The position numbers and the translations under genes were made by a program. The notes beneath the pieces were generated by a model. That model was not told where the DNA came from, made no database searches, and saw only the letters and a program-made list of their open reading frames with translations. A stretch of DNA of 64,000 nt from Utricularia gibba (lineage: Eukaryota > Plantae > Magnoliophyta): contig CM007989.1 in assembly GCA_002189035.1 (NCBI GenBank), positions 2,294,001-2,358,000 on the forward strand. The letters are read 5' to 3'. This document shows, one piece after another, positions 17,592-33,784 of this stretch; positions within the stretch are counted from its first letter, which is position 1, and each line of letters starts with the position of its first letter.

Positions 17592-18001
17592 CGCTGTTCC
17601 GTCCTGAATCGATAGACAGCGGCGCCATAGACATTTGTATGGCTTGTGACGCGCTGCTGGAAAAGAAAAAACGACACGTCGAGGGTTTTCCTCCAGCCAA
17701 TGGCATTCAAGAACTCTGCTGACGTGGATGTCAACACACTGCACTGTTCCAACTTTAATTCGAAAATTATTTTTTAAAAAATAGAAATCAATTATCACAC
17801 ACTTCCAAATTTTTATTTTTTTATGAGAGAATAAGTTACTTTCAACATAAAAAAGAAAATTACTTGACTTCTCATATAATGCAATTTATTCTCGAATAAG
17901 ATGTTCAATATTTTATATAATAAATGAGAAATATATTTTTATTTTATGTTACAATATTTATTTGATAACTAACATAAACCGCCATAATTTTATATATTGA
18001 A

Positions 18002-18186
18002 CACGTGCCGTTGCCGAGCACACCTGCCGGCGTCACTCACTCACCATGCGTGATTTTCTCTTTTAAGAAACGTTTCTAGTAGTGCACGTGCGTTTAGGCG
18101 CATGCTGGTTGACTACGTAACTCCATGCTCTCGTGCATGTTGACGTCATCCTGTCTACGTAACACAGTCATGTCGTGTAACACGTG
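18002..18186. promoter_or_regulatory. Dense ACGT-core cluster in the divergent p24delta / ACA-like intergenic region
   Basis: CACGTG at 18002, 18085 and 18181; TACGTA at 18114 and 18156; TGACGTCA at 18141. Confidence 0.55.
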
Positions 18187-18479
18187 ACCCTATGGGAAAA
18201 AGAAGAAGATACCCAGAGCAGCTGTTGAGCTGTTTAAAGGAATTCAACGTTGTGTTGAAATCTCATCCAACTTTGCATGGAGCAGTTGGTGGAGGTGCAA
18301 CTCGCAAGAATCTTCCGAGAAGCTTCGCGGGAGTCAAATGGCTGATTTTTTTACGCGAAACAATCAATTCAGGTGAGGCTCCGGTTGCAGCACATCGTTT
18401 GTTGTTGATAGTTATACTTTGAGTTTTCCTTCAACTTTGTTGTTGTTGTTGCGATAAACCAGTGTATTCCATCTGAAAA

Positions 18480-21400
18480 ATGGGGCCATACGTTCCTCAA
18501 CAGTTCGCCGGTGATGGCAGGAAAAAGCAGCAGTTAGAAATTGTAAGAGTCAAAAGGAACCCTTTCGAGAAGATGCGTAGATGGAAGGTGAGTGAAGGTC
18601 GCGGAAAAATTAGGGTTGTGATTTCCTCCAAAATTGAATTTCTCTCTCTCTGTGTTTTTTTTTTTTTTTTTTTTTTTTGTTCTCAGCAAGCTACTATGGT
18701 GTTGAGTGCCTTTCGGTTATTTGGGTCCAAATCAGGATCCAAGATTCAAAAGCAGGGGAAGCATTTGAGGGCCAAGATGAAAGCAAATGCTCATGCTGTT
18801 AGGGTTGCTGAAAGTTTGAAGTTGAAAATTTTTTATTCTTGTCTGTGTTGATAATGAGTCATGATTTTTTTTTTTATTGGAGGCAGGCTGCTGCGCATCT
18901 CCAAGCTTCTACAAACGGTATGAAGTTTAATTTTCCTTGCCTCTATATAAAAACTATCTGCTTGATTCGATATATTTATGAACAGATGATAATGGACTAC
19001 GGAAGGAACAGGACGAAGGGAGTAAAAGATATGTTGTTTGTACAGAAAAGAAGTCTACAACACCTGTGGGAGAATTCCTACAGAAAGATGGTGTGGATTC
19101 AGGAAAAGGTTTAGTGGTTTTCTTGTTTGGTTTAGGAATGCAAGAAACTTGAAGTTGATATACTGATTTTTAGATTCTAAAGGAAGCTTACATGTAGGTA
19201 GTAAAAGATATAGTGTTTGTACAGAAAAGAAGTCTTCGACAACAATGGCACAACTCCTACAGGAAGATAATTTGCATTTGAAAAAACGTCGGTTAGATGA
19301 ATCTGAGGTTTTCTTGTATTGTTTACGAAACTTGGAATTTTGATGTCTATATTTTTATCAAATGCAGAAGAATTGTGCCATGAAGGAAGCAAGAGATATA
19401 CTATTCGTACAGAAAAGTTAACAACATCCAGGAGTGAATTCCTACAGAAAGATGATTTGGGTTCGGGAAAAGGTTTGTTAAAAATCCATCCACGGTTTTC
19501 ATGTTTGGTTCTTAATCTTGTAAACTTGATGCTGGTAAAATCTTGATCAGATGCGAAAGGAATATGCCATGAAAGAAGCAACAGACATACTATATGTGCA
19601 GAAAATAAATCTGCAACAACTGAGAACGAACAGCTACAATATGATGGCTTGGACATGGGAAAAAGTTCCTTAGATCATTCCACGGTTTGCTTATTGAGTT
19701 TACGTGTCTCTGTTCTTTTTTCCTTCTAATTCATTGTGATTGACAGCAAGCATGACGCTAGTTCAGGGATACATGAAAAAGCTGGAGACTGTAACAAGAA
19801 TTGACAACTTTGGTATCAGCCTTAAGGATCTATCTGCCATGTCTAAGGAGCATGACATCTCTTTCTTAGAGCGAAATGGAGGGGCAAGTTTTCTGTCTAT
19901 TATGCATGTATCAACACTGAAATGTTTTTCCATTTGATGGATTTCCTTTTACGTTAGATTGGAGGAATTGCTGGGAAGCTAATAACGAATTTGAAAGAAG
20001 GTATATGTGGAGATGAGACTGATGTGAAACTTAGAAAAATGACTTTTGGATCAAATGAATATCCTAAGAAAAAGAGAAGCTTCTGGGTAAATTCATCTAC
20101 TCAAGAGATTATGTCGGTCCTGTTAGTGTAGGATTTTGCTCCACTTTCTTAACTTTTTCACCTGCTTATCTTCAGAGATTCATCCAGGATTCATGTACGG
20201 ACACCACCTTGGTTATCTTGATGTTTGCAGCTGTTGCTACTTCAGCCTTTGGAATAAAGACAGAGGTGAGGGATAGTACAATATTGGGTGAATAAAGGTC
20301 ATCTTCTGCTTAGATGAATAAAACAGGACTTTCGTATGTTATTAGGGAATAAACCGAGGTTGGTATGAAGGAGCAAGTATTGTTTTGGCTGTTCTTATAT
20401 TCATCATGTTTACAGGTATCTTTTGCATACTCATCATGTTTTGAGATAGCAACTATTTCGTTGTTGTAAAGGTTGGTTTTATTTCTTCTCAGCTGTCAAT
20501 AATTTCAAACAATTCATACTGATCCAGAAGATGGAAGAAGAAAAGGAGAAGATACAAGTGGAGGTCAGGGATATGCGCTGCCACTGTGCTTGCTTCTCTT
20601 CGTTTTCTTACTCACATGTTATGAATCACAGGTCCTTAGGGGCAATTCCCAAACAAAAGTTCACATAACAGAAATAGTTGCTGGGGACATTGTTAACTTG
20701 AGAACTGGTGATGAGGTGAAACCAAGTGTAACCAGTTTTCTTGTAGGCTCTTTCTCATCTTGTTAGTATATGATCTGTATTTATCTTCCCTTCAAAACAA
20801 AAAAACAGGTACCTGCAGACGGACTTGTCATCACCAGTCATTCCCTGTCAGTCGACGAGTCAAGAATGACAGGGGACAGTAAAATTGTGAGTAAATGCGA
20901 CAGTATACATTTTTTAGTTGTACACATTTTGTCTTAACGAAACGGGTTTTGTTTTTCTCTACAGATTCACAAGGATGCTGCAAGAGAGCCCTTTCTTATG
21001 GCAGGATCTAAAGTTGTTGATGGCAGGGGAAGAATGATGGTAAGAATCTTATATTCATGAAAGCCATCCTAAAATCATAAAAAATTGTGGGATTATTTAT
21101 TCTTGCACAGGTTACAAGTGTAGGAACCAATACTGAGTGGGGACTACTCAAGGCAAGCAGCATAAACGATCATCAAGAAACTCCTCTGCAGGTTACACAC
21201 TGCTGTTGGCAATTTTTAACATGCCCTCCCACCATCTTCTGATCATGAAACTGCTGCATCTTTGTCATGATTTCAGGTGCGGCTGGACGACGCAGGCACA
21301 TTCATCGGCATAGTTGCTGTTGTAGTATCTGCAGTGTTTCTCACTGTTCTTGTCATCGGGTACAAATACAACAAACACAGTTAGTTCTCTGGTTATTCCC

Positions 21401-21985
21401 TTCCTATTCTTTGACAACTCAATCACTATTTGTATGTGTAGGCTTTTTAGTTGGCGCAGTAGAAACCCCTATGGTAGTCTAGAGTTCATGACCTCAAGGA
21501 TCAAGTTGGTCAATGCAACAAACACCTTCATCAAGATTTTTACTGTGGCAGTAAATTCTCACACATTTCATTTGTGAATCAAAACCACATAACTGTTTAC
21601 AGCATATTACACTTTTTTTTTTTACCTGTTTCCTTCAGGTCACCATATTTGTGAAAGAAGCCCGTGAAGGCCTCCTCTTGGGCATCATTTTAGTGTAAGT
21701 TGAATGTCTAATATTAAAGTTGTTTATAAAACCCTTTTCAAAATGAATAACTAATAGTATATGCTTTCCATGCAGGTTTGCCTACTTGATGAAGGAATTA
21801 TATGCCAAAAAGGTCAATCCCATCATTGCATATATTTTATTTCTATTATTATTATTTATTTAAAAAACAAAACATGACTTGCCGTTTGCCTTCTACGCCA
21901 GGTACAAGCCAAGGGGCTATCCACAAGCCTGGAGATGGATGAGGTGAAAGAGCGAAAGAGGCGCAAACTTTTTCTTTGCATTTAG
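18480..21985 (+). CDS. Truncated, diverged ACA8/9/10-type (P2B) Ca2+-ATPase-derived protein, 21 exons, 631 aa, lacking P/N domains and M5-M10
   Basis: Exons 18480-18587, 18687-18803, 18887-18917, 18986-19108, 19174-19287, 19368-19472, 19551-19664, 19747-19883, 19958-20086, 20176-20265, 20346-20415, 20493-20563, 20632-20715, 20809-20886, 20965-21039, 21111-21191, 21277-21359, 21442-21550, 21639-21694, 21776-21812 and 21902-21985 sum to 1896 nt with matching phases and no internal stop. Motifs: RRWKQA..VL, FGSNEYP, WYEGASI, VPADG, DESRMTGDS, VGTNTEWG, ETPLQVRL. Confidence 0.85.
18986..19746 (+). repeat. Four tandem exon+intron units (period about 185-195 bp) inside the ACA-derived gene
   Basis: Exons of 123, 114, 105 and 114 nt, all phase 1-1, consensus GSKRYxxCTEKKSxT...LQxDxLxxGK; the introns share GGTTTTC, AAACTTG and CCACGGTTT. 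Confidence 0.9.
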
Positions 21986-22412
21986 GAGGTGTTCTGATAA
22001 TATTGATTATTAAATGTCACAATTTTGAGATACAGACGCAGAATCACATATTATACCTTCTTTTCTTTTCTGTTGAAAGTAAGATATGATCGAACCGTGT
22101 ATATATAGACTGTGAGCTCATTACAGAACAGCACAGCTGTGTTCTTTTCAGGGATTCCTGCTCTGCATTGTCTAGTTTGTGTGATCTTGCTCAACTCTGA
22201 TTCCTCAACGCTTGGTGGAAACCTCGTCTGAAGTGAAGTGCTAGCTAGCTTTATTGTGATGAGTCCATAAAAATACAAGCACAAGATGAAGAAAGAAAGC
22301 CTACTGCCTGACTGAACTCCCATGCTTCATCTCTGGTTGGTTGAGAGGAAGAATGGAATTTCACAGGTGACGCGAGACTGGCGTTTACAAAAGCATGCAA
22401 CTGGGTGCCTCT

Positions 22413-24862
22413 TTAAAACTGCCGGGATGTCGACCAAAGCTTCTTTCTGGCAACGAGCACTGCGTCTTCCTCTAGGCTGGCTTCTGGAACCGAATCGCCT
22501 ATGGCTTCCCAGCGCAATGGGCCCAGATACTTCTTTACATAGTTGACTACAGTTAGCTTATCATGGATGATGACAACGCCGGAAGGTCTAAGAATGCGGT
22601 CCATCTCAAGAAGAAGATCCTCGCTGCTACATCCTTTCTTCTTGATATCCGAAAAGACGGTCCAGGCATGGAGTAGGTCGTAAGTTCTGGGGTACGTGGA
22701 GAAGGCCTCGCACCTGCATGCAGAATGGTTCAGAGATGAAGCAAAGAGTGAAAAGACACAGTTAGTAAAAGGAAGCATAAAAGGTAGGCGTACCAGTTGT
22801 GCACACTGCCAATCAAACCTCGGTCATAGATAATCTTGAGTGTATTGGGTCCATCTTCAGGAACAACATTCATCACCCAGACATCCCTTTCTTTCAATGC
22901 AGCAGCAAAGGATCCTATGTTTGCTTTCATGTCCATCACATTTCTTATGCTATCAGCCAAAATATTTGGACCCAATATACTCCAATATTTGTCCACCCTT
23001 TGACGCCACAGATCCTGCTTGCAAAATTTCTCAACATTACACAAAGAACTGCCATCCCATATTTTGTCCAGAGTTGCAGATAATAATAGCAAGGTGAAGG
23101 AGAAGATACCGAATCATTTTCAAATATCTCGGATGAATAGCCGAGGTCAGCAAGGCGAGGAGGAGGAGAAATTAATCGAGCAGGCCATGGAGCCAGTCCA
23201 CTGCCTCTGGCTTTATGATCATCTGCAGTAAGAAAGAAGGAAAATAACATTGAAGTCAACGACTGATCAGCAAAAAAGGAGGGAGATGATAGTTTTCCAT
23301 CCAGGGTGGACATGCAGAAAGTAGGTATATGGTCTTTGTGTTAGCGATGCTCACGTTCAGAGTAGGGCATGATACAGGCCTTCATTGGTACACCCCAAAC
23401 GGCATCAGGATCATCATCTGATGCACAGAGAGGCGGCCGGGTTCCAGGCTTTCTTTCCAAATAGCAATGATTTGTTAATGGTTTTTGCCAAATAGCAGTC
23501 TGGTTTTTCCTTGCCACAACTTTCCAACACATGCGGCCAACAAGTGCATTCATCTCCTTCCATATTCTGCGATCCTCTTCATCCTGAGCATAAGCTTCAG
23601 GTGATGAGTAAACAAAATAACCGCCAGGTCGAAGAAGCCGATCCAACTCCAGAAGTAGTATCCCATCCCGCTGCAGCCAGTCGATTCTACAACGAGAACA
23701 ATGAGCTAGTTCAAAGGATCTGCTTGGGTAAGTGAGTCTCTTTGAACCTAGAACACCAAGGTATGCAGGAATTCCTCTTTCTAATGCGAATTGGATCTGA
23801 TTTTCATGCACATCATTAGGAGCAAGTGACATTGCAATCATGTCCGATGAAAGAAGGTAACCACCAAAGCTTGCAACACCACAACCAACATCAAGAACTG
23901 TGCGCAGTTTTCCTCTGTTGTTCAGGTTACTGTTCGGAAACTTGAGCATCTGCGATATCAAAAACAGTGTTCAGTAAGTGCCCATGCATTCCAAGGAGCT
24001 AGTGAGTCAGAAATTGCAATATGCTGAAATCAGCCGGTCAATTAGCATTTTCATATTTAAAACTCACACTTGCAATAGAAGCAATGTATTTATCAGCTCC
24101 ATAGTGAAAGTGAGTTCCTCCACCAGGAAAATAAATTTTGTTCCCTTTAACAACCATCCAATTCTGGTCAGATTTCTCGTGTGCTAAGTGAGTGTGAGGA
24201 ATGTTGGCTTTCCATACTTCATCTCTACTTTTTGGCCATTTTACTGGAATCTGTGGCTCAAAATGTTGCAAAACATTAGAGAAACAACAGAAACTGAGGT
24301 GATAAAACCACAATAACAACCATGAACGTAGATGTCCTCACCTTATATCCTCGAGGAGGTGGGATCAGACAATTGTAACGTCTGTCAGGTAATGGGCAGT
24401 GCCGTTCGTAGTGTTCCATTAAAGAATAATCCACCTTCAATCTCGTTTGATAAATAAGATTTTTGTCCAGGCAGGGGATCAACTCTGAAAGGTTATCATC
24501 ACAGACCTTTTGACATGCAGAAGATGATAATCAGAAATTGATAGCGGACTTCTAGTGTACTACTACTAGAATCTGAAGTGCCACAAAAATATGAAATCAC
24601 TTACAGGAAAGCTCTTGGGGAAAGCATCATCTGTCCATAATTTGGTGTAAGCTTCATGTAGCATACTAACAGAATCGGAATCTTCATCTCCATGCAAATA
24701 TGAAGATCCCAGTTTCATCAGAGACTCTTTGCCATACTGCAGAGCAGACTCTCCGGAAGTTCTTTTGCCAAAGTGGGCGTACAAAAACACAAGAAAAAGA
24801 GCAGCAAACACCACATAAGCAAAGATCCGCTTTTTATGTGCTCGAACTGAGCGCCCTCTCAT
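22413..24862 (-). CDS. Probable Golgi SAM-dependent methyltransferase, PMT1/3/8-like (DUF248, Methyltransf_29)
   Basis: Type II anchor; ELIPCLD...MEHYERHCP; [16 protein letters not shown]; [12 protein letters not shown]; RNVMDMKA; [11 protein letters not shown]; MDRILRP. Confidence 0.93.
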
Positions 24863-27221: not shown

Positions 27222-27779
27222 ATGGAAGCCAAGAAGGGAAGCGTTGTTGCCATTCTTGTCTTCCTGGTGCTGTGGGTTGCAGCATGCTCTGCAGCCAGGA
27301 CCTTGATTGGGGTGGAGACATACCATGGAGCTTTCGGTGAGGGTGGAGGGTCGGGCTTCGGGGGTGGAGAAGGTGGAGGCGGCGGTGGTGGAGGTGGGTT
27401 TGCAGCAGGTGGTGAGTATGGTTCCGGGTATGGGAGTGGTGGTGGGGAAGGCCATGGCGGCGGTGGTGGACTCAATGGTGGCGGTGGTGGTGGCGGCGGT
27501 GGTGGAGGCGGCGGAGGTGGAGCTGCTGGTGGATACCCTGGCTATGGTGGTGGGCATGCGTGGGGATACGGAGGAGGTGAAGGAGCAGGCATTGGTGGCG
27601 GACATCCCGGAGGATATGGCGGCAGTGGCATCGGGGGCATTTACGGTGGGGGTGGCCGCGGTGGCTCCGGCTACGGGAGCGGAGGAGGAGCAGGTGGAGG
27701 TGCCGCAGGCGCAGCACATGGAGGAGGATATGGTGGAGGCGAAGGAGGCGGCGGCGGTTATGGTGGCTATGCTCCTTGA
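27222..27779 (+). CDS. Secreted glycine-rich cell wall protein, intronless
   Basis: Signal peptide MEAKKGSVVAILVFLVLWVAACSA followed by GGGxG/GYG repeats; TATAAAT at about 27163. Confidence 0.92.
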   Translation: MEAKKGSVVAILVFLVLWVAACSAARTLIGVETYHGAFGEGGGSGFGGGEGGGGGGGGGFAAGGEYGSGYGSGGGEGHGGGGGLNGGGGGGGGGGGGGGGAAGGYPGYGGGHAWGYGGGEGAGIGGGHPGGYGGSGIGGIYGGGGRGGSGYGSGGGAGGGAAGAAHGGGYGGGEGGGGGYGGYAP

Positions 27780-29247: not shown

Positions 29248-29901
29248 ATGGGAAGTTCATCAAACTACAGAAACCCTTGTTTGACGATGCACCAACCGTG
29301 GGCTTCACTGCTGGTCCATGGTATCAAACGAATCGAGGGCAGGTCTTGGCCTGCTCCGATTCGAGGGCGTCTTTGGATCCATGCCGCTGGTAAGGTTCCA
29401 GAGCCTGATACCATAAAAGCTATGGAAGATTTTTACCGTGAAATCTATGCTGTGGATGGAATAACAGACCTAAAGTTTCCAGAGCATTACCCAGTATCCA
29501 GGTTACTTGGTTGCGTTGATGTAGTTGGGTGTGTTACTTGTGAAGAGCTAGTAAATTGGGATGCTGTACCGCAATCTGTGAGATTGGAAGGGCAAACATC
29601 GTTTTGTTGGCTGTGTGAGCGACCCCAGAAACTAGTTATCCCATTTGAGATGCGTGGCTACCAGGGGGTATATAATTTGCAGAAGAAGGTATACGAATCC
29701 GCCGTCAGGGGTCTTGCATCTGCTTCTGCCCCTTTACCAGCCACATTCCCACTTCCGTATCCTGGAGATCGGTTCTCGTTGAAACCTTGCTCACGTCCTT
29801 CACCAGATGAGGAAAAGCCTCCTGGTCTTGAAGCTGCCATCGCTGGTGCTAGGATGGCTGCGAATCAATTTTCGAAGAAGACATCTCATGGCGGCAAGTA
29901 A
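29248..29901 (+). CDS. ASCH-domain (ASC-1 homology) RNA-binding protein, single exon, 217 aa
   Basis: CLTMHQPWASLLVHGIKRIEGRSW...GRLWIHAA signature; uninterrupted ORF. Confidence 0.92.
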   Translation: MGSSSNYRNPCLTMHQPWASLLVHGIKRIEGRSWPAPIRGRLWIHAAGKVPEPDTIKAMEDFYREIYAVDGITDLKFPEHYPVSRLLGCVDVVGCVTCEELVNWDAVPQSVRLEGQTSFCWLCERPQKLVIPFEMRGYQGVYNLQKKVYESAVRGLASASAPLPATFPLPYPGDRFSLKPCSRPSPDEEKPPGLEAAIAGARMAANQFSKKTSHGGK

Positions 29902-32434: not shown

Positions 32435-33784
32435 ATGGCTTTGCAGAATATTGGTGCTGGCAACAAAGATGATGCCTTCTACCGGTATAAGATGCCTAAA
32501 ATGGTTACTAAAATTGAAGGTCGTGGAAATGGCATCAAGACCAATGTAGTGAATATGGTTGAAATTGCAAAGGCTCTTGGAAGGCCTGCATCGTATACCA
32601 CAAAGTATTTTGGTTGTGAGCTGGGGGCACAGTCGAAGTTCGATGAGAAGACTGGTACATCACATGTCAATGGAGCTCATGATACTTCCAAGCTTGCTGG
32701 ACTCCTTGAAAACTTCATCAAGAAATTTGTGCAGTGCTATGGTTGTGGCAACCCTGAAACAGAAGTTATCATAACGAAGTCCCAGATGATCAATCTCAAG
32801 TGTGCAGCATGTGGTTTCATCTCTGAAGTTGACATGAGGGACAAGTTGACGACTTTCATCTTGAAAAACCCTCCAGAGTCCAAAAAGTCTTCCAAGGACA
32901 AGAAGGCTATGAGAAGGGCTGAGAAAGAGAGGCTGAAGGAAGGCGAGGCTGCTGATGAAGAGCAGAAGAAACTCAAGAAAGAGGCGTCTAAGAAGAAAGG
33001 TTCAACTGGCAGCTCCAAAGATGCAGCCTCAAAAGTGTCTGGCAAGAAAAAGTCTCAATCTGATGAGGAGCAATCTCCCACTGGCAGCCAAGTAGATGAA
33101 CAGGAAGTTGCTGCAGCTGCTGCTAATGAGAGTGATGATGACGTGGAATGGCAGACAGATATCTCTGCGGTTGCCGCACAGCGAACAATCCAGGAGCAGC
33201 TGAATGCTGTTACAGCAAGTATGGTCATGCTCGCACCAAACGAGGACAAAAAAGAACATGTGAAAAGTTCTCCAAAAGAAGAGGACCATAAAGCCAACGG
33301 GAAGTCAAATGGAATCCATGCTGATGGTCCTGATCCTATCATCCATTCAATAAAAGAGTATTTGAAGAAGGGTTCTCCTGCTTCCCAACTGAAATCTTTC
33401 CTGGACTCCCTCTCTGGCACGCAGCAGGAAATCATGGATGCCTTGTTCGAGGCTTTATTCGAGGGAGTGGGGAAGGGCTTCTCCAAAGAGGTTCTAAAAA
33501 AGAAGAACTACATCGCTGCTGCAGTGCAGGTGGAGGGCTCACAGCCTCTCCTGCTTCATGCCATCGAGTCCTTCTGCACGAAAGCCGCAAGCCCTGAGGC
33601 CGTGAAGGAGGTGGCTCTGGTTCTAAAGTCGCTCTATGATGGTGATGTCCTGGAAGAGGAACACATCGTGGAGTGGTACAACAAGGGTTCAGCTGGCAGC
33701 AATAAGGGCTCTCCGATCTGGAAGAATACCAAGCCATTCGTGGAGTGGCTCCAGAGCGCAGAATCCGAATCCGAAGAAGAGTGA
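32435..33784 (+). CDS. eIF5: Eukaryotic translation initiation factor 5
   Basis: DDAFYRYKMP...GRGNGIKT, CYGCGNPET/CAACG zinc motif, C-terminal W2 domain with acidic tail. Confidence 0.98.
   Translation: MALQNIGAGNKDDAFYRYKMPKMVTKIEGRGNGIKTNVVNMVEIAKALGRPASYTTKYFGCELGAQSKFDEKTGTSHVNGAHDTSKLAGLLENFIKKFVQCYGCGNPETEVIITKSQMINLKCAACGFISEVDMRDKLTTFILKNPPESKKSSKDKKAMRRAEKERLKEGEAADEEQKKLKKEASKKKGSTGSSKDAASKVSGKKKSQSDEEQSPTGSQVDEQEVAAAAANESDDDVEWQTDISAVAAQRTIQEQLNAVTASMVMLAPNEDKKEHVKSSPKEEDHKANGKSNGIHADGPDPIIHSIKEYLKKGSPASQLKSFLDSLSGTQQEIMDALFEALFEGVGKGFSKEVLKKKNYIAAAVQVEGSQPLLLHAIESFCTKAASPEAVKEVALVLKSLYDGDVLEEEHIVEWYNKGSAGSNKGSPIWKNTKPFVEWLQSAESESEEE

What the first reader, a model, noticed from the sequence alone, without database searches (positions are those of the whole stretch)
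18986..19746. Four tandem-duplicated symmetric exons inserted just after the autoinhibitory domain
Seen: DNGLRKEQDEGSKRYVVCTEKKSTTPVGEFLQKDGVDSGK / SKGSLHVGSKRYSVCTEKKSSTTMAQLLQEDNLHLKK / ELCHEGSKRYTIRTEKLTTSRSEFLQKDDLGSGK / AKGICHERSNRHTICAENKSATTENEQLQYDGLDMGK. All are phase 1-1 with lengths divisible by 3, so any subset can be skipped in frame. The introns are co-duplicated, so this is genomic exon-unit amplification. Inference: it is an expansion of the short linker exon between the CaM-binding region and the first membrane segment, giving an approximately 150-aa S/T/K-rich repeat that I do not recognise, and whose length splicing could tune.
Basis: partly seen in the sequence, partly recalled or inferred. 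Interest (0 to 1): 0.8.

Follow-up and report, generated by a model that had tools for sequence, protein, structure and literature searches.

The report
Four new repeat exons in half-pump
A plant gene derived from the front half of a calcium pump has gained four tandem copies of a new exon-plus-intron unit, all spliced into its mRNA; they add about 150 residues of probably floppy linker, a real but fairly ordinary case of exon amplification.

Summary
Window 18966-19746 carries four diverged copies (period 179-192 bp, 61-78% identity) of an exon-plus-intron unit.

RNA contigs from three studies show a fully spliced 21-exon mRNA that includes all four exons. Exon b starts at 19198, not 19174. 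Exon d ends at 19684, not 19664, and joins the next exon at 19767, not 19747. So a, b and c are phase 1-1, but d is phase 1-to-0.

There is no sign of exon skipping. Removing d, or all four exons, would break the frame with the splice sites in use.

Genomic and transcript copies of normal ACA8/9/10 genes, fetched from metagenomes, show no such exon. The short linker exon persists as window exon 3, and the repeats lie inside what is normally phase-1 intron 3. They are therefore new exons, not an expanded linker exon.

No match was found in Pfam, in 1.84 billion protein representatives, or elsewhere in the window. The region is highly charged, hydrophilic and folds with low confidence. dN/dS among units is 0.5-1.1, yet the frame has been kept.

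The host gene is a 623-residue ACA-derived "half-pump" with decayed catalytic motifs, which this scan had already noted at this locus.

Verdict: a new member of a known kind (tandem exon amplification), of moderate interest.

The parts
18295..18372 (+). 5' UTR exon (seen spliced in run X3; the intron 18373-18462 is retained in the X1/X5 contigs)
   Evidence: contig length 803 nt and depth fractions; inferred by arithmetic
18463..18587 (+). Exon 1, ATG at 18480; encodes the start of the regulatory N-terminus, ending ...RRWK
   Evidence: blastp to canonical ACA N-termini E 1e-8 to 1e-10
18687..18803 (+). Exon 2, 39 codons; calmodulin-binding/autoinhibitory segment, same length as the canonical QAALVLNAS...AHAQVIR exon
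   Evidence: its only PDB match is the ACA8 regulatory fragment 4AQR_D, weak (E 0.8)
18887..18917 (+). Exon 3, 31 nt, phase 0 to 1; the true homologue of the canonical short linker exon (40 nt in dicot-type loci, 58 nt in grass loci, also ending in phase 1 at G|GTA)
18986..19108 (+). Repeat exon a, 123 nt, phase 1-1
19198..19287 (+).
   Evidence: (95 nt covered in bin 19104-19287 in X1, X3, X5; contig lengths)
19368..19472 (+). Repeat exon c, 105 nt, phase 1-1
19551..19684 (+). Repeat exon d, 134 nt, phase 1 to 0; uses the distal donor ACG|GT, which all four units keep as a conserved GGTTT(T/G)C motif
   Evidence: (contigs end at 19684/19685, with 30-nt overlaps to the retained-intron contig)
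19685..19766 (+). Last intron of the array, 82 nt; retained in low-depth contigs (depth 4-5 against 13-29)
   Evidence: records 6 and 10
19767..19883 (+). Exon 8, 117 nt, phase 0, GYMKK...NFGISL...ERNGG; homologue of the canonical GDFGI...YGG exon; followed by a GC-AG intron
19958..21985 (+). Exons 9-21 of the half-pump up to the stop codon at 21983-21985: Cation_ATPase_N, A domain, TM1-TM4 region. Motif changes: TGES to TGDS, PEGLP to REGLL, DKTGT region to ERKRR
   Evidence: 13 GT-AG joints. The canonical motif spellings are established P-type ATPase knowledge

Best explanation
A unit of about 185 bp, made of one new coding exon plus its downstream intron, was amplified to four tandem copies. 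This happened inside what is the phase-1 intron 3 of ordinary ACA8/9/10-type Ca2+-ATPase genes.

All four exons are constitutively spliced into the mRNA. Together they insert 151 residues (residues 86-236 of a 623-residue ORF). The insertion lies between the calmodulin-binding regulatory segment and the Cation_ATPase_N/A-domain part of a truncated, catalytically decayed ACA derivative.

Units a-c are symmetric 1-1 exons because they use a proximal donor. Unit d uses the distal donor (phase 0) and pairs with an exon-8 acceptor that is also in phase 0, a compensated pair.

The encoded repeat has the consensus xKGLCHEGSKRYTVCTEKKSTTTxxEFLQKDGLDSGK. It is hydrophilic, highly charged and predicted without stable structure. 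It most likely acts as a flexible spacer or tether, possibly carrying repeated short Ser/Thr or Cys motifs, rather than as a folded domain.

Shown here: the repeat, its expression, the splice pattern, the lack of relatives, and its absence from canonical genes. Inferred: the disordered-spacer role and selection for an open frame.
For: - Repeat anatomy.
- Expression and splice sites: with arithmetic checked. Contigs of 781/746/803 nt equal the sum of the proposed exons. The same four-copy length is seen in three studies, one of them with SNPs.
- Canonical gene structure from 59 fetched plant ACA loci: exon 3 ends in phase 1 and is followed directly by the GDFGI exon. None has a unit-like sequence.
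- The distance from exon 3 to exon 8 here is 849 nt. Subtracting the 761-bp array leaves about 90 nt, like this gene's other introns (68-93 nt).
- No homologue: Pfam, profile against 1.84 billion representatives, word search, metagenome scan.
- Composition: K+R 26, D+E 26, S+T 30 of 151; mean hydropathy -1.19; below the Uversky boundary.
- AF2 of a unit with the 4-row alignment: pLDDT 62.6, essentially no secondary structure (one 3-residue helical turn).
- Frame maintenance: exonic length differences between units are whole codons. The simulated chance that all four exons stay stop-free under neutral change is about 1-2% at branch length 0.2-0.3.
- The stop codon lies in the last exon, so no NMD is expected.
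Against: - dN/dS among units is 0.47-1.08, and exon identity (63-79%) is only slightly above intron identity (51-69%). The residue sequence is therefore weakly constrained or not at all.
- There is no protein-level evidence.
- The host gene is only 44-50% identical to canonical ACAs, which are 75-81% identical to each other. It has lost its catalytic motifs, so it might be decaying.
One search did not print those joints.
- Orthologues or the parent gene in the same or related species could not be examined.
- The AF2 run used a single 40-residue unit with a 4-row alignment, which is weak evidence for disorder.
Confidence: 0.6

Rival explanations
1. Neutral passenger. The array is a selectively irrelevant intronic tandem duplication that happens to be spliced in. 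Its host is a transcribed gene remnant under relaxed constraint, and the repeat does nothing for the protein, if a protein is made at all.
For: dN/dS among units reaches 1.08. The host has lost TGES, PEGLP and DKTGT and is truncated before the P and N domains. An overlapping upstream ORF starts in the 5' UTR exon (read). No homologues were found anywhere.
Against: The 1869-nt ORF is intact across 20 spliced introns despite about 50% protein divergence. Simulated neutral change at only 0.1 substitutions per site leaves the CDS stop-free in 0.13% of trials, and the four repeat exons in about 11%. Exonic indels between units are whole codons, while intronic ones are not. The mRNA is present at depths similar to the neighbouring gene in three studies.
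Confidence: 0.27
2. The repeat is an expansion of a pre-existing short linker exon, made of four fully symmetric 1-1 exons, so that alternative splicing can tune linker length.
For: Canonical intron 3 is phase 1, and a, b and c are 1-1. One low-depth contig in X6 starts at 19756, upstream of the acceptor in use.
Against: The canonical linker exon is still present as exon 3 and is unrelated to the unit. No canonical gene has an exon at this position. The contigs show no branch at 19664 or 19747 and no skipping, and the joint count is fully accounted for by constitutive introns. With the sites in use, skipping d or all four exons shifts the frame (31+117 nt).
Confidence: 0.06
3. Foreign origin. 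The unit is an exonised transposon fragment or a piece captured from another gene, later amplified.
For: The unit has no detectable similarity to the flanking exons or introns or to any canonical ACA locus. Its origin is therefore open.
Against: There are no terminal inverted repeats at the array edges. There is no second copy in 64 kb, no Pfam family and no protein match in 1.84 billion representatives. Plant transposon libraries and the rest of the genome could not be searched.
Confidence: 0.07

Closest known systems
Tandem exon duplication (exon-unit amplification), as reviewed by Ivanov and Pervouchine 2022 (PMC9013439)
   Same: Adjacent exons with their introns are copied in tandem inside one gene. 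Splice sites are kept, and the intron and exon phases are compatible (1-1 exons in a phase-1 intron).
   Different: Many described cases are mutually exclusive exons that substitute for each other. Here all copies are included together and lengthen the protein. The amplified exon has no counterpart in the canonical gene, and the last copy has shifted to an asymmetric 1-to-0 form paired with a shifted acceptor.
Plant autoinhibited Ca2+-ATPases of the ACA8/9/10 group (P2B)
   Same: Same exon-intron layout for exons 1-3 and 8-21. The N-terminal segment is homologous to the calmodulin-binding regulatory region. Cation_ATPase_N and E1-E2 ATPase pieces and the TM1-TM3 hydrophobic segments are present.
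   Different: It stops after the M4-equivalent region, before the phosphorylation site. TGES, PEGLP and DKTGT are altered. It is only 44-50% identical to canonical members. It carries the 151-residue repeat where canonical proteins have a linker of about 15-20 residues (Ser99 of ACA8, a known phosphosite, lies just past the crystallised regulatory fragment; PMC3276087).
Exonisation of intronic sequence
   Same: New coding exons appear inside an old intron without disturbing the neighbouring exons.
   Different: No transposon source was identified. The new exon was then amplified fourfold, and inclusion appears constitutive rather than minor or alternative.

Membership tests
Tandem exon duplication | Two or more neighbouring exons with significant mutual similarity | tested here: met
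   Four units; tblastn E 1e-4 to 1e-8, 61-78% nt identity in register
Tandem exon duplication | Flanking intron sequence duplicated with the exon (a genomic, not RNA-level, event) | tested here: met
   The intron parts align at 51-69% identity, with a conserved GGTTTTCTTGT motif in all four units
Tandem exon duplication | Copies carry working splice sites and appear in mRNA | tested here: met
   AG/GT at all boundaries. RNA contig lengths and depth fractions in 3 studies fit inclusion of all four. The joints inside the array are inferred, not printed.
Tandem exon duplication | Mutually exclusive or otherwise alternative use of the copies | tested here: not met
   Unbranched contigs run through all four exons in X1, X3 and X5. 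Contigs drop rare variants, so minor isoforms are not excluded.
Symmetric (1-1) exon modules | Each exon starts and ends in the same phase, with a length divisible by 3 | tested here: inconclusive
   a (123), b (90) and c (105) are 1-1. d is 134 nt, phase 1 to 0, in the expressed form. A symmetric 114-nt form of d is possible on paper but not seen.
Autoinhibited Ca2+-ATPase (ACA, P2B) | N-terminal calmodulin-binding autoinhibitory region | tested here: inconclusive
   Homologous to canonical N-termini (blastp E 1e-8 to 1e-10 at 30-42% identity). The only PDB hit is ACA8 fragment 4AQR_D at E 0.8. Calmodulin binding was not tested.
Autoinhibited Ca2+-ATPase (ACA, P2B) | Catalytic motifs TGES, PEGLP and DKTGT | tested here: not met
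   The model reads TGDS, REGLL and ERKRR at the aligned places (alignment to canonical proteins). The motif definitions come from established P-type ATPase knowledge.
Autoinhibited Ca2+-ATPase (ACA, P2B) | P and N domains and TM5-TM10 | tested here: not met
   The ORF ends at 21985. No further ACA-like sequence lies downstream. A convergent Methyltransf_29 gene starts by about 22147.
Known protein repeat or domain families (Pfam) | Significant match of a unit to a curated family | tested here: not met
   No family for units a-c. Unit d has only a chance-level CCDC23 match (E 0.1, 13 bits against a cut-off of 27).
Transposon-derived exon | Terminal repeats, dispersed copies, or a match to a transposon protein or family | tested here: inconclusive
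   No inverted repeats at the array edges and no other copy in the window. Plant repeat libraries and the whole genome are not available here.

The most novel reading that the evidence does not exclude
The array is a selected, lineage-specific regulatory tether. A catalytically dead, membrane-anchored half-ACA keeps its calmodulin-binding head. It would use four copies of a new Ser/Thr/Lys- and Cys-containing motif as a long disordered arm, for example for multisite phosphorylation or partner docking. In that form it could act as a calmodulin sink or a regulator of full-length Ca2+ pumps. This would be an example of de novo exon birth plus amplification building a new signalling protein.
Probability: 0.12. 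Interest if true: 0.65.

Novelty: new member of a known kind. Interest (0 to 1): 0.36.

Why it matters
This is a clean, RNA-supported example of how a protein gains a new internal repeat. A new exon arises inside an old phase-1 intron, is amplified with its intron, and stays in frame through donor choice, including a compensated donor/acceptor shift at the last copy.

It sits in the regulatory N-terminus of a Ca2+-pump derivative, a region where linker residues are known phosphorylation sites in ACA8 (PMC3276087). If the protein is made, the repeat could change how the calmodulin-binding head is presented.

By itself it does not open a long-standing question. Most of the biological interest lies in the host 'half-pump', which this scan had already noted at this locus.

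Tried and rejected
- Tandem Repeats Finder found nothing, because the copies are below about 70% identity with indels. The repeat finder and alignments recovered the array.
- A profile of the four units against 1.84 billion protein representatives gave 0 hits.
- The unit-c ORF against 5.8 billion clusters gave no candidate. The length window of that tool excludes full-length kin, so this is weak.
- Pfam on each unit gave nothing.
- A metagenome scan with the unit alignment matched 217 patterns, none confirmed.
- Local alignment of the units against exon 2 to intron 3, against the sequence after d, and against a control region was no better than shuffles (p 0.1-0.8). I first thought by eye that the start of exon 8 resembled the start of the unit; the test rejects this.
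- I first assumed from memory that canonical exon 3 is 36 nt and phase 0. The fetched loci show 40 or 58 nt and phase 1, so that idea was dropped.
- Inverted repeats at the array edges, which would suggest a transposon, were not found.
- The antisense 159-codon ORF 19177-19656 has no Pfam match and reads as chance.
- An exact look-up of two neighbouring proteins, to learn the organism, found them not in the collection.
Orthologues and the annotated protein were therefore not retrieved.

Full report
**1. What is in the sequence**

Window 18966-19746 holds four head-to-tail units of 183-216 bp.
- The repeat finder aligns a 94-nt core in register at 19017, 19196, 19381 and 19573 (spacing 179, 185, 192 nt; 61-78% identity to copy a). 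It finds a second family in the intron part of every unit around GGTTTTCTTGT.
- Tandem Repeats Finder missed the array, because the copies are too diverged.
- Translated, the units hit each other with E 1e-4 to 1e-8 and hit nothing else in the 64-kb window.
- The protein alignment has nine invariant columns and the consensus xKGLCHEGSKRYTVCTEKKSTTTxxEFLQKDGLDSGK.
- The DNA alignment shows that the intron parts are co-linear as well.

**2. Expression and true exon boundaries**

RNA-type runs from three studies hold the locus. Their contigs laid on 18000-23500 give 13 printed GT-AG (one GC-AG) joints from 19883 to 21902, and long contigs upstream.

The joints inside the array were among ten not printed, so I reconstructed them.
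- Contig X1-1 is 781 nt and starts with 18407-18587 (181 nt). The remaining 600 nt equal 117+31+123+90+105+134.
- X5-9 (746 nt) and X3-5 (803 nt, with a 78-nt 5' UTR exon) fit the same sum.
- The depth fraction per bin agrees in all three runs. About 119 nt are covered in 18920-19103, 95 nt in 19104-19287, 103 nt in 19288-19471 and 108 nt in 19472-19655.
- The exons are therefore a 18986-19108, b 19198-19287, c 19368-19472 and d 19551-19684. All have AG/GT.

The contigs end at 19684/19685 and resume at 19766. They have exact 30-nt overlaps to a low-depth contig spanning 19656-19790/95. That is the signature of a bubble between a spliced path (19684 joined to 19767) and a retained intron.

The ten unprinted joints are exactly accounted for:
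- seven upstream coding introns;
- the 5' UTR intron;
- one intron of the neighbouring gene;
- one alternative acceptor seen in X6.
This leaves no room for exon-skipping joints. Contigs drop rare variants, so minor isoforms remain possible.

**3.

Exons a, b and c are symmetric phase 1-1. Exon d is 134 nt, phase 1 to 0, and exon 8 starts in phase 0 at 19767.

It may be ancestral or a minor form, but it is not what the contigs show.

With the sites in use, skipping a, b or c keeps the frame. Skipping d, or all four, does not (31+117 nt).

The repeat region is 151 residues, residues 86-236 of a 623-residue ORF.

**4. Host gene**

The spliced model has 21 exons and an intact ORF from 18480 to the stop at 21983-21985, in the last exon.
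- Pieces match Cation_ATPase_N and E1-E2_ATPase.
- Exon 2's only PDB match is the ACA8 regulatory fragment 4AQR_D, and it is weak.
- Against canonical plant ACA8/9/10-type proteins, the region after the repeat is 44-50% identical. Those proteins are 75-81% identical to each other.
- At the places of TGES, PEGLP and DKTGT the model reads TGDS, REGLL and ERKRR. The protein ends there.
- A convergent Methyltransf_29 gene follows.

So the host is an ACA-derived 'half-pump', as two earlier notes of this scan on the same stretch say.

A neutral simulation leaves the 1869-nt CDS stop-free in only 0.13% of trials at 0.1 substitutions per site. This argues that the open frame has been maintained.

**5. 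Where the repeat sits relative to normal ACA genes**

A degenerate DNA pattern for FGSNTYPxKKG fetched 59 plant ACA loci from metagenome collections. They comprise spliced transcripts and genomic contigs from several plants, including Arabidopsis-like ACA9/ACA10 sequences (recognised from memory) and grass sequences.

Transcript-to-genome alignments, tblastn and inspection of the boundaries give a conserved layout:
- an exon ending ...RRWR;
- a 39-codon exon QAALVLNAS...AHAQVIR;
- a short exon AALLFKLAGE..., 40 nt in the five dicot-type loci and 58 nt in the two grass loci read, always ending in phase 1 at G|GTA;
- then directly the GDFGI...YGG exon.

Window exons 2, 3 and 8 correspond to these. 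Exon 3 (31 nt) even keeps the G|GTATGA donor.

None of the 59 loci has anything like the unit, at protein level (best E 0.09) or DNA level. The units are no more similar to the flanking exons and introns than shuffled sequence is.

The repeat exons therefore lie inside canonical phase-1 intron 3 and are new exons, not copies of the linker exon. Removing the 761-bp array from the 849 nt between exons 3 and 8 leaves about 90 nt, the size of this gene's other introns (68-93 nt).

**6. Nature of the encoded repeat**

No relative was found:
- no Pfam family;
- no hit for the four-unit profile in 1.84 billion representatives;
- no word-sharing candidate;
- no metagenome locus.

Composition is 26 K+R, 26 D+E, 30 S+T and 5 Cys in 151 residues. 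Mean hydropathy is -1.19, below the Uversky order/disorder boundary. AlphaFold2 on a unit with the four-row alignment gives pLDDT 62.6 and essentially no secondary structure. That is weak evidence, but it is consistent with disorder.

Among units, dN/dS is 0.47-1.08 and dS is 0.34-0.84. Exon identity is only slightly above intron identity. The duplications are therefore old and the residues little constrained.

Against pure neutrality:
- length differences in the exons are whole codons;
- the chance that all four exons stay stop-free is about 1-2% at branch length 0.2-0.3;
- the same four-copy length is seen in three studies, one with SNPs.

**7. Most likely mechanism, and rivals**

Best reading (0.6): a lineage-specific new exon was born in intron 3, amplified fourfold and constitutively included. 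It encodes a flexible charged spacer between the calmodulin-binding head and the membrane-bound remnant of the pump. In ACA8 this neighbourhood carries regulatory phosphosites (PMC3276087), so repeated Ser/Thr motifs could matter. That part is inference.

Rivals:
- neutral passenger in a decaying but transcribed gene (0.27);
- transposon or captured-fragment origin (0.07). This rival concerns origin only and cannot be settled without a genome-wide and repeat-library search.

**8. Novelty**

Tandem exon duplication is common and well described (PMC9013439), and exonisation of intron sequence is too. This is a new member of that kind.

It has two less usual details: all copies are included rather than mutually exclusive, and the last copy has a compensated donor/acceptor shift. 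I found no report of such an insertion in ACA N-termini in the searches made, but those searches were not exhaustive.

**9. Limits**

- The organism is coded and unknown to me.
- The junctions inside the array are inferred from lengths and depths.
- The parent gene, orthologues and the annotated protein could not be retrieved, because the spliced protein has no contiguous reference.

Noticed in passing
window 19884-19957: The intron after exon 8 is a GC-AG intron (GG|GCAAGT...TTAG). Spliced contigs in all four runs support it.
   Followed up: partly
window 18295-18480: The 5' UTR exon holds an ATG (about 18341). After splicing to 18463 it opens an upstream ORF of about 28 codons that overlaps the main ATG out of frame. 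The 5' UTR intron 18373-18462 is spliced in run X3 but retained in the X1/X5 contigs.
   Followed up: no
window 20085-20188: One contig in run X6 joins 20085 to about 20187 instead of 20176. This is an alternative acceptor 11-12 nt downstream in the exon encoding RFIQDSC...
   Followed up: no
window 19177-19656 (minus strand): A 159-codon ORF runs antisense through units b-d, crossing both exons and introns. It has no Pfam match, and all joints are GT-AG on the plus strand, so it is probably chance.
   Followed up: partly
window 17831-17857 and 22061-22087: A 27-nt inverted repeat (81% complementary) brackets the whole half-pump gene. It is AT-rich and may be chance, but it would be worth checking as a possible mobile-element or duplication boundary.
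   Followed up: no
window 19648-19672 and 19823-19847: A 25-nt, 80% complementary pair joins the unused proximal donor of exon d to exon 8. It could mask that donor in the pre-mRNA. Not tested.
   Followed up: no
window 22147-23961 and beyond (minus strand): A convergent, expressed, spliced Methyltransf_29 (putative pectin methyltransferase type) gene. Its 3' end abuts or overlaps the 3' end of the half-pump transcript (X1 contig to 22210, X3 contig from 22147).
   Followed up: partly
window 27222-27779, 29248-29901, 32435-33784 (plus strand): Other ORFs in the window: a glycine-rich protein ORF (no Pfam family), an ASCH-domain ORF, and an apparently single-exon eIF5 gene (eIF-5_eIF-2B plus W2 domains).
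   Followed up: partly
L007 10523-10810: One metagenome-derived plant contig carries, about 8 kb from its ACA gene, a second degraded copy of the Cation_ATPase_N exon region (42% to the query). Partial ACA duplicates therefore occur in other plants too.
   Followed up: no
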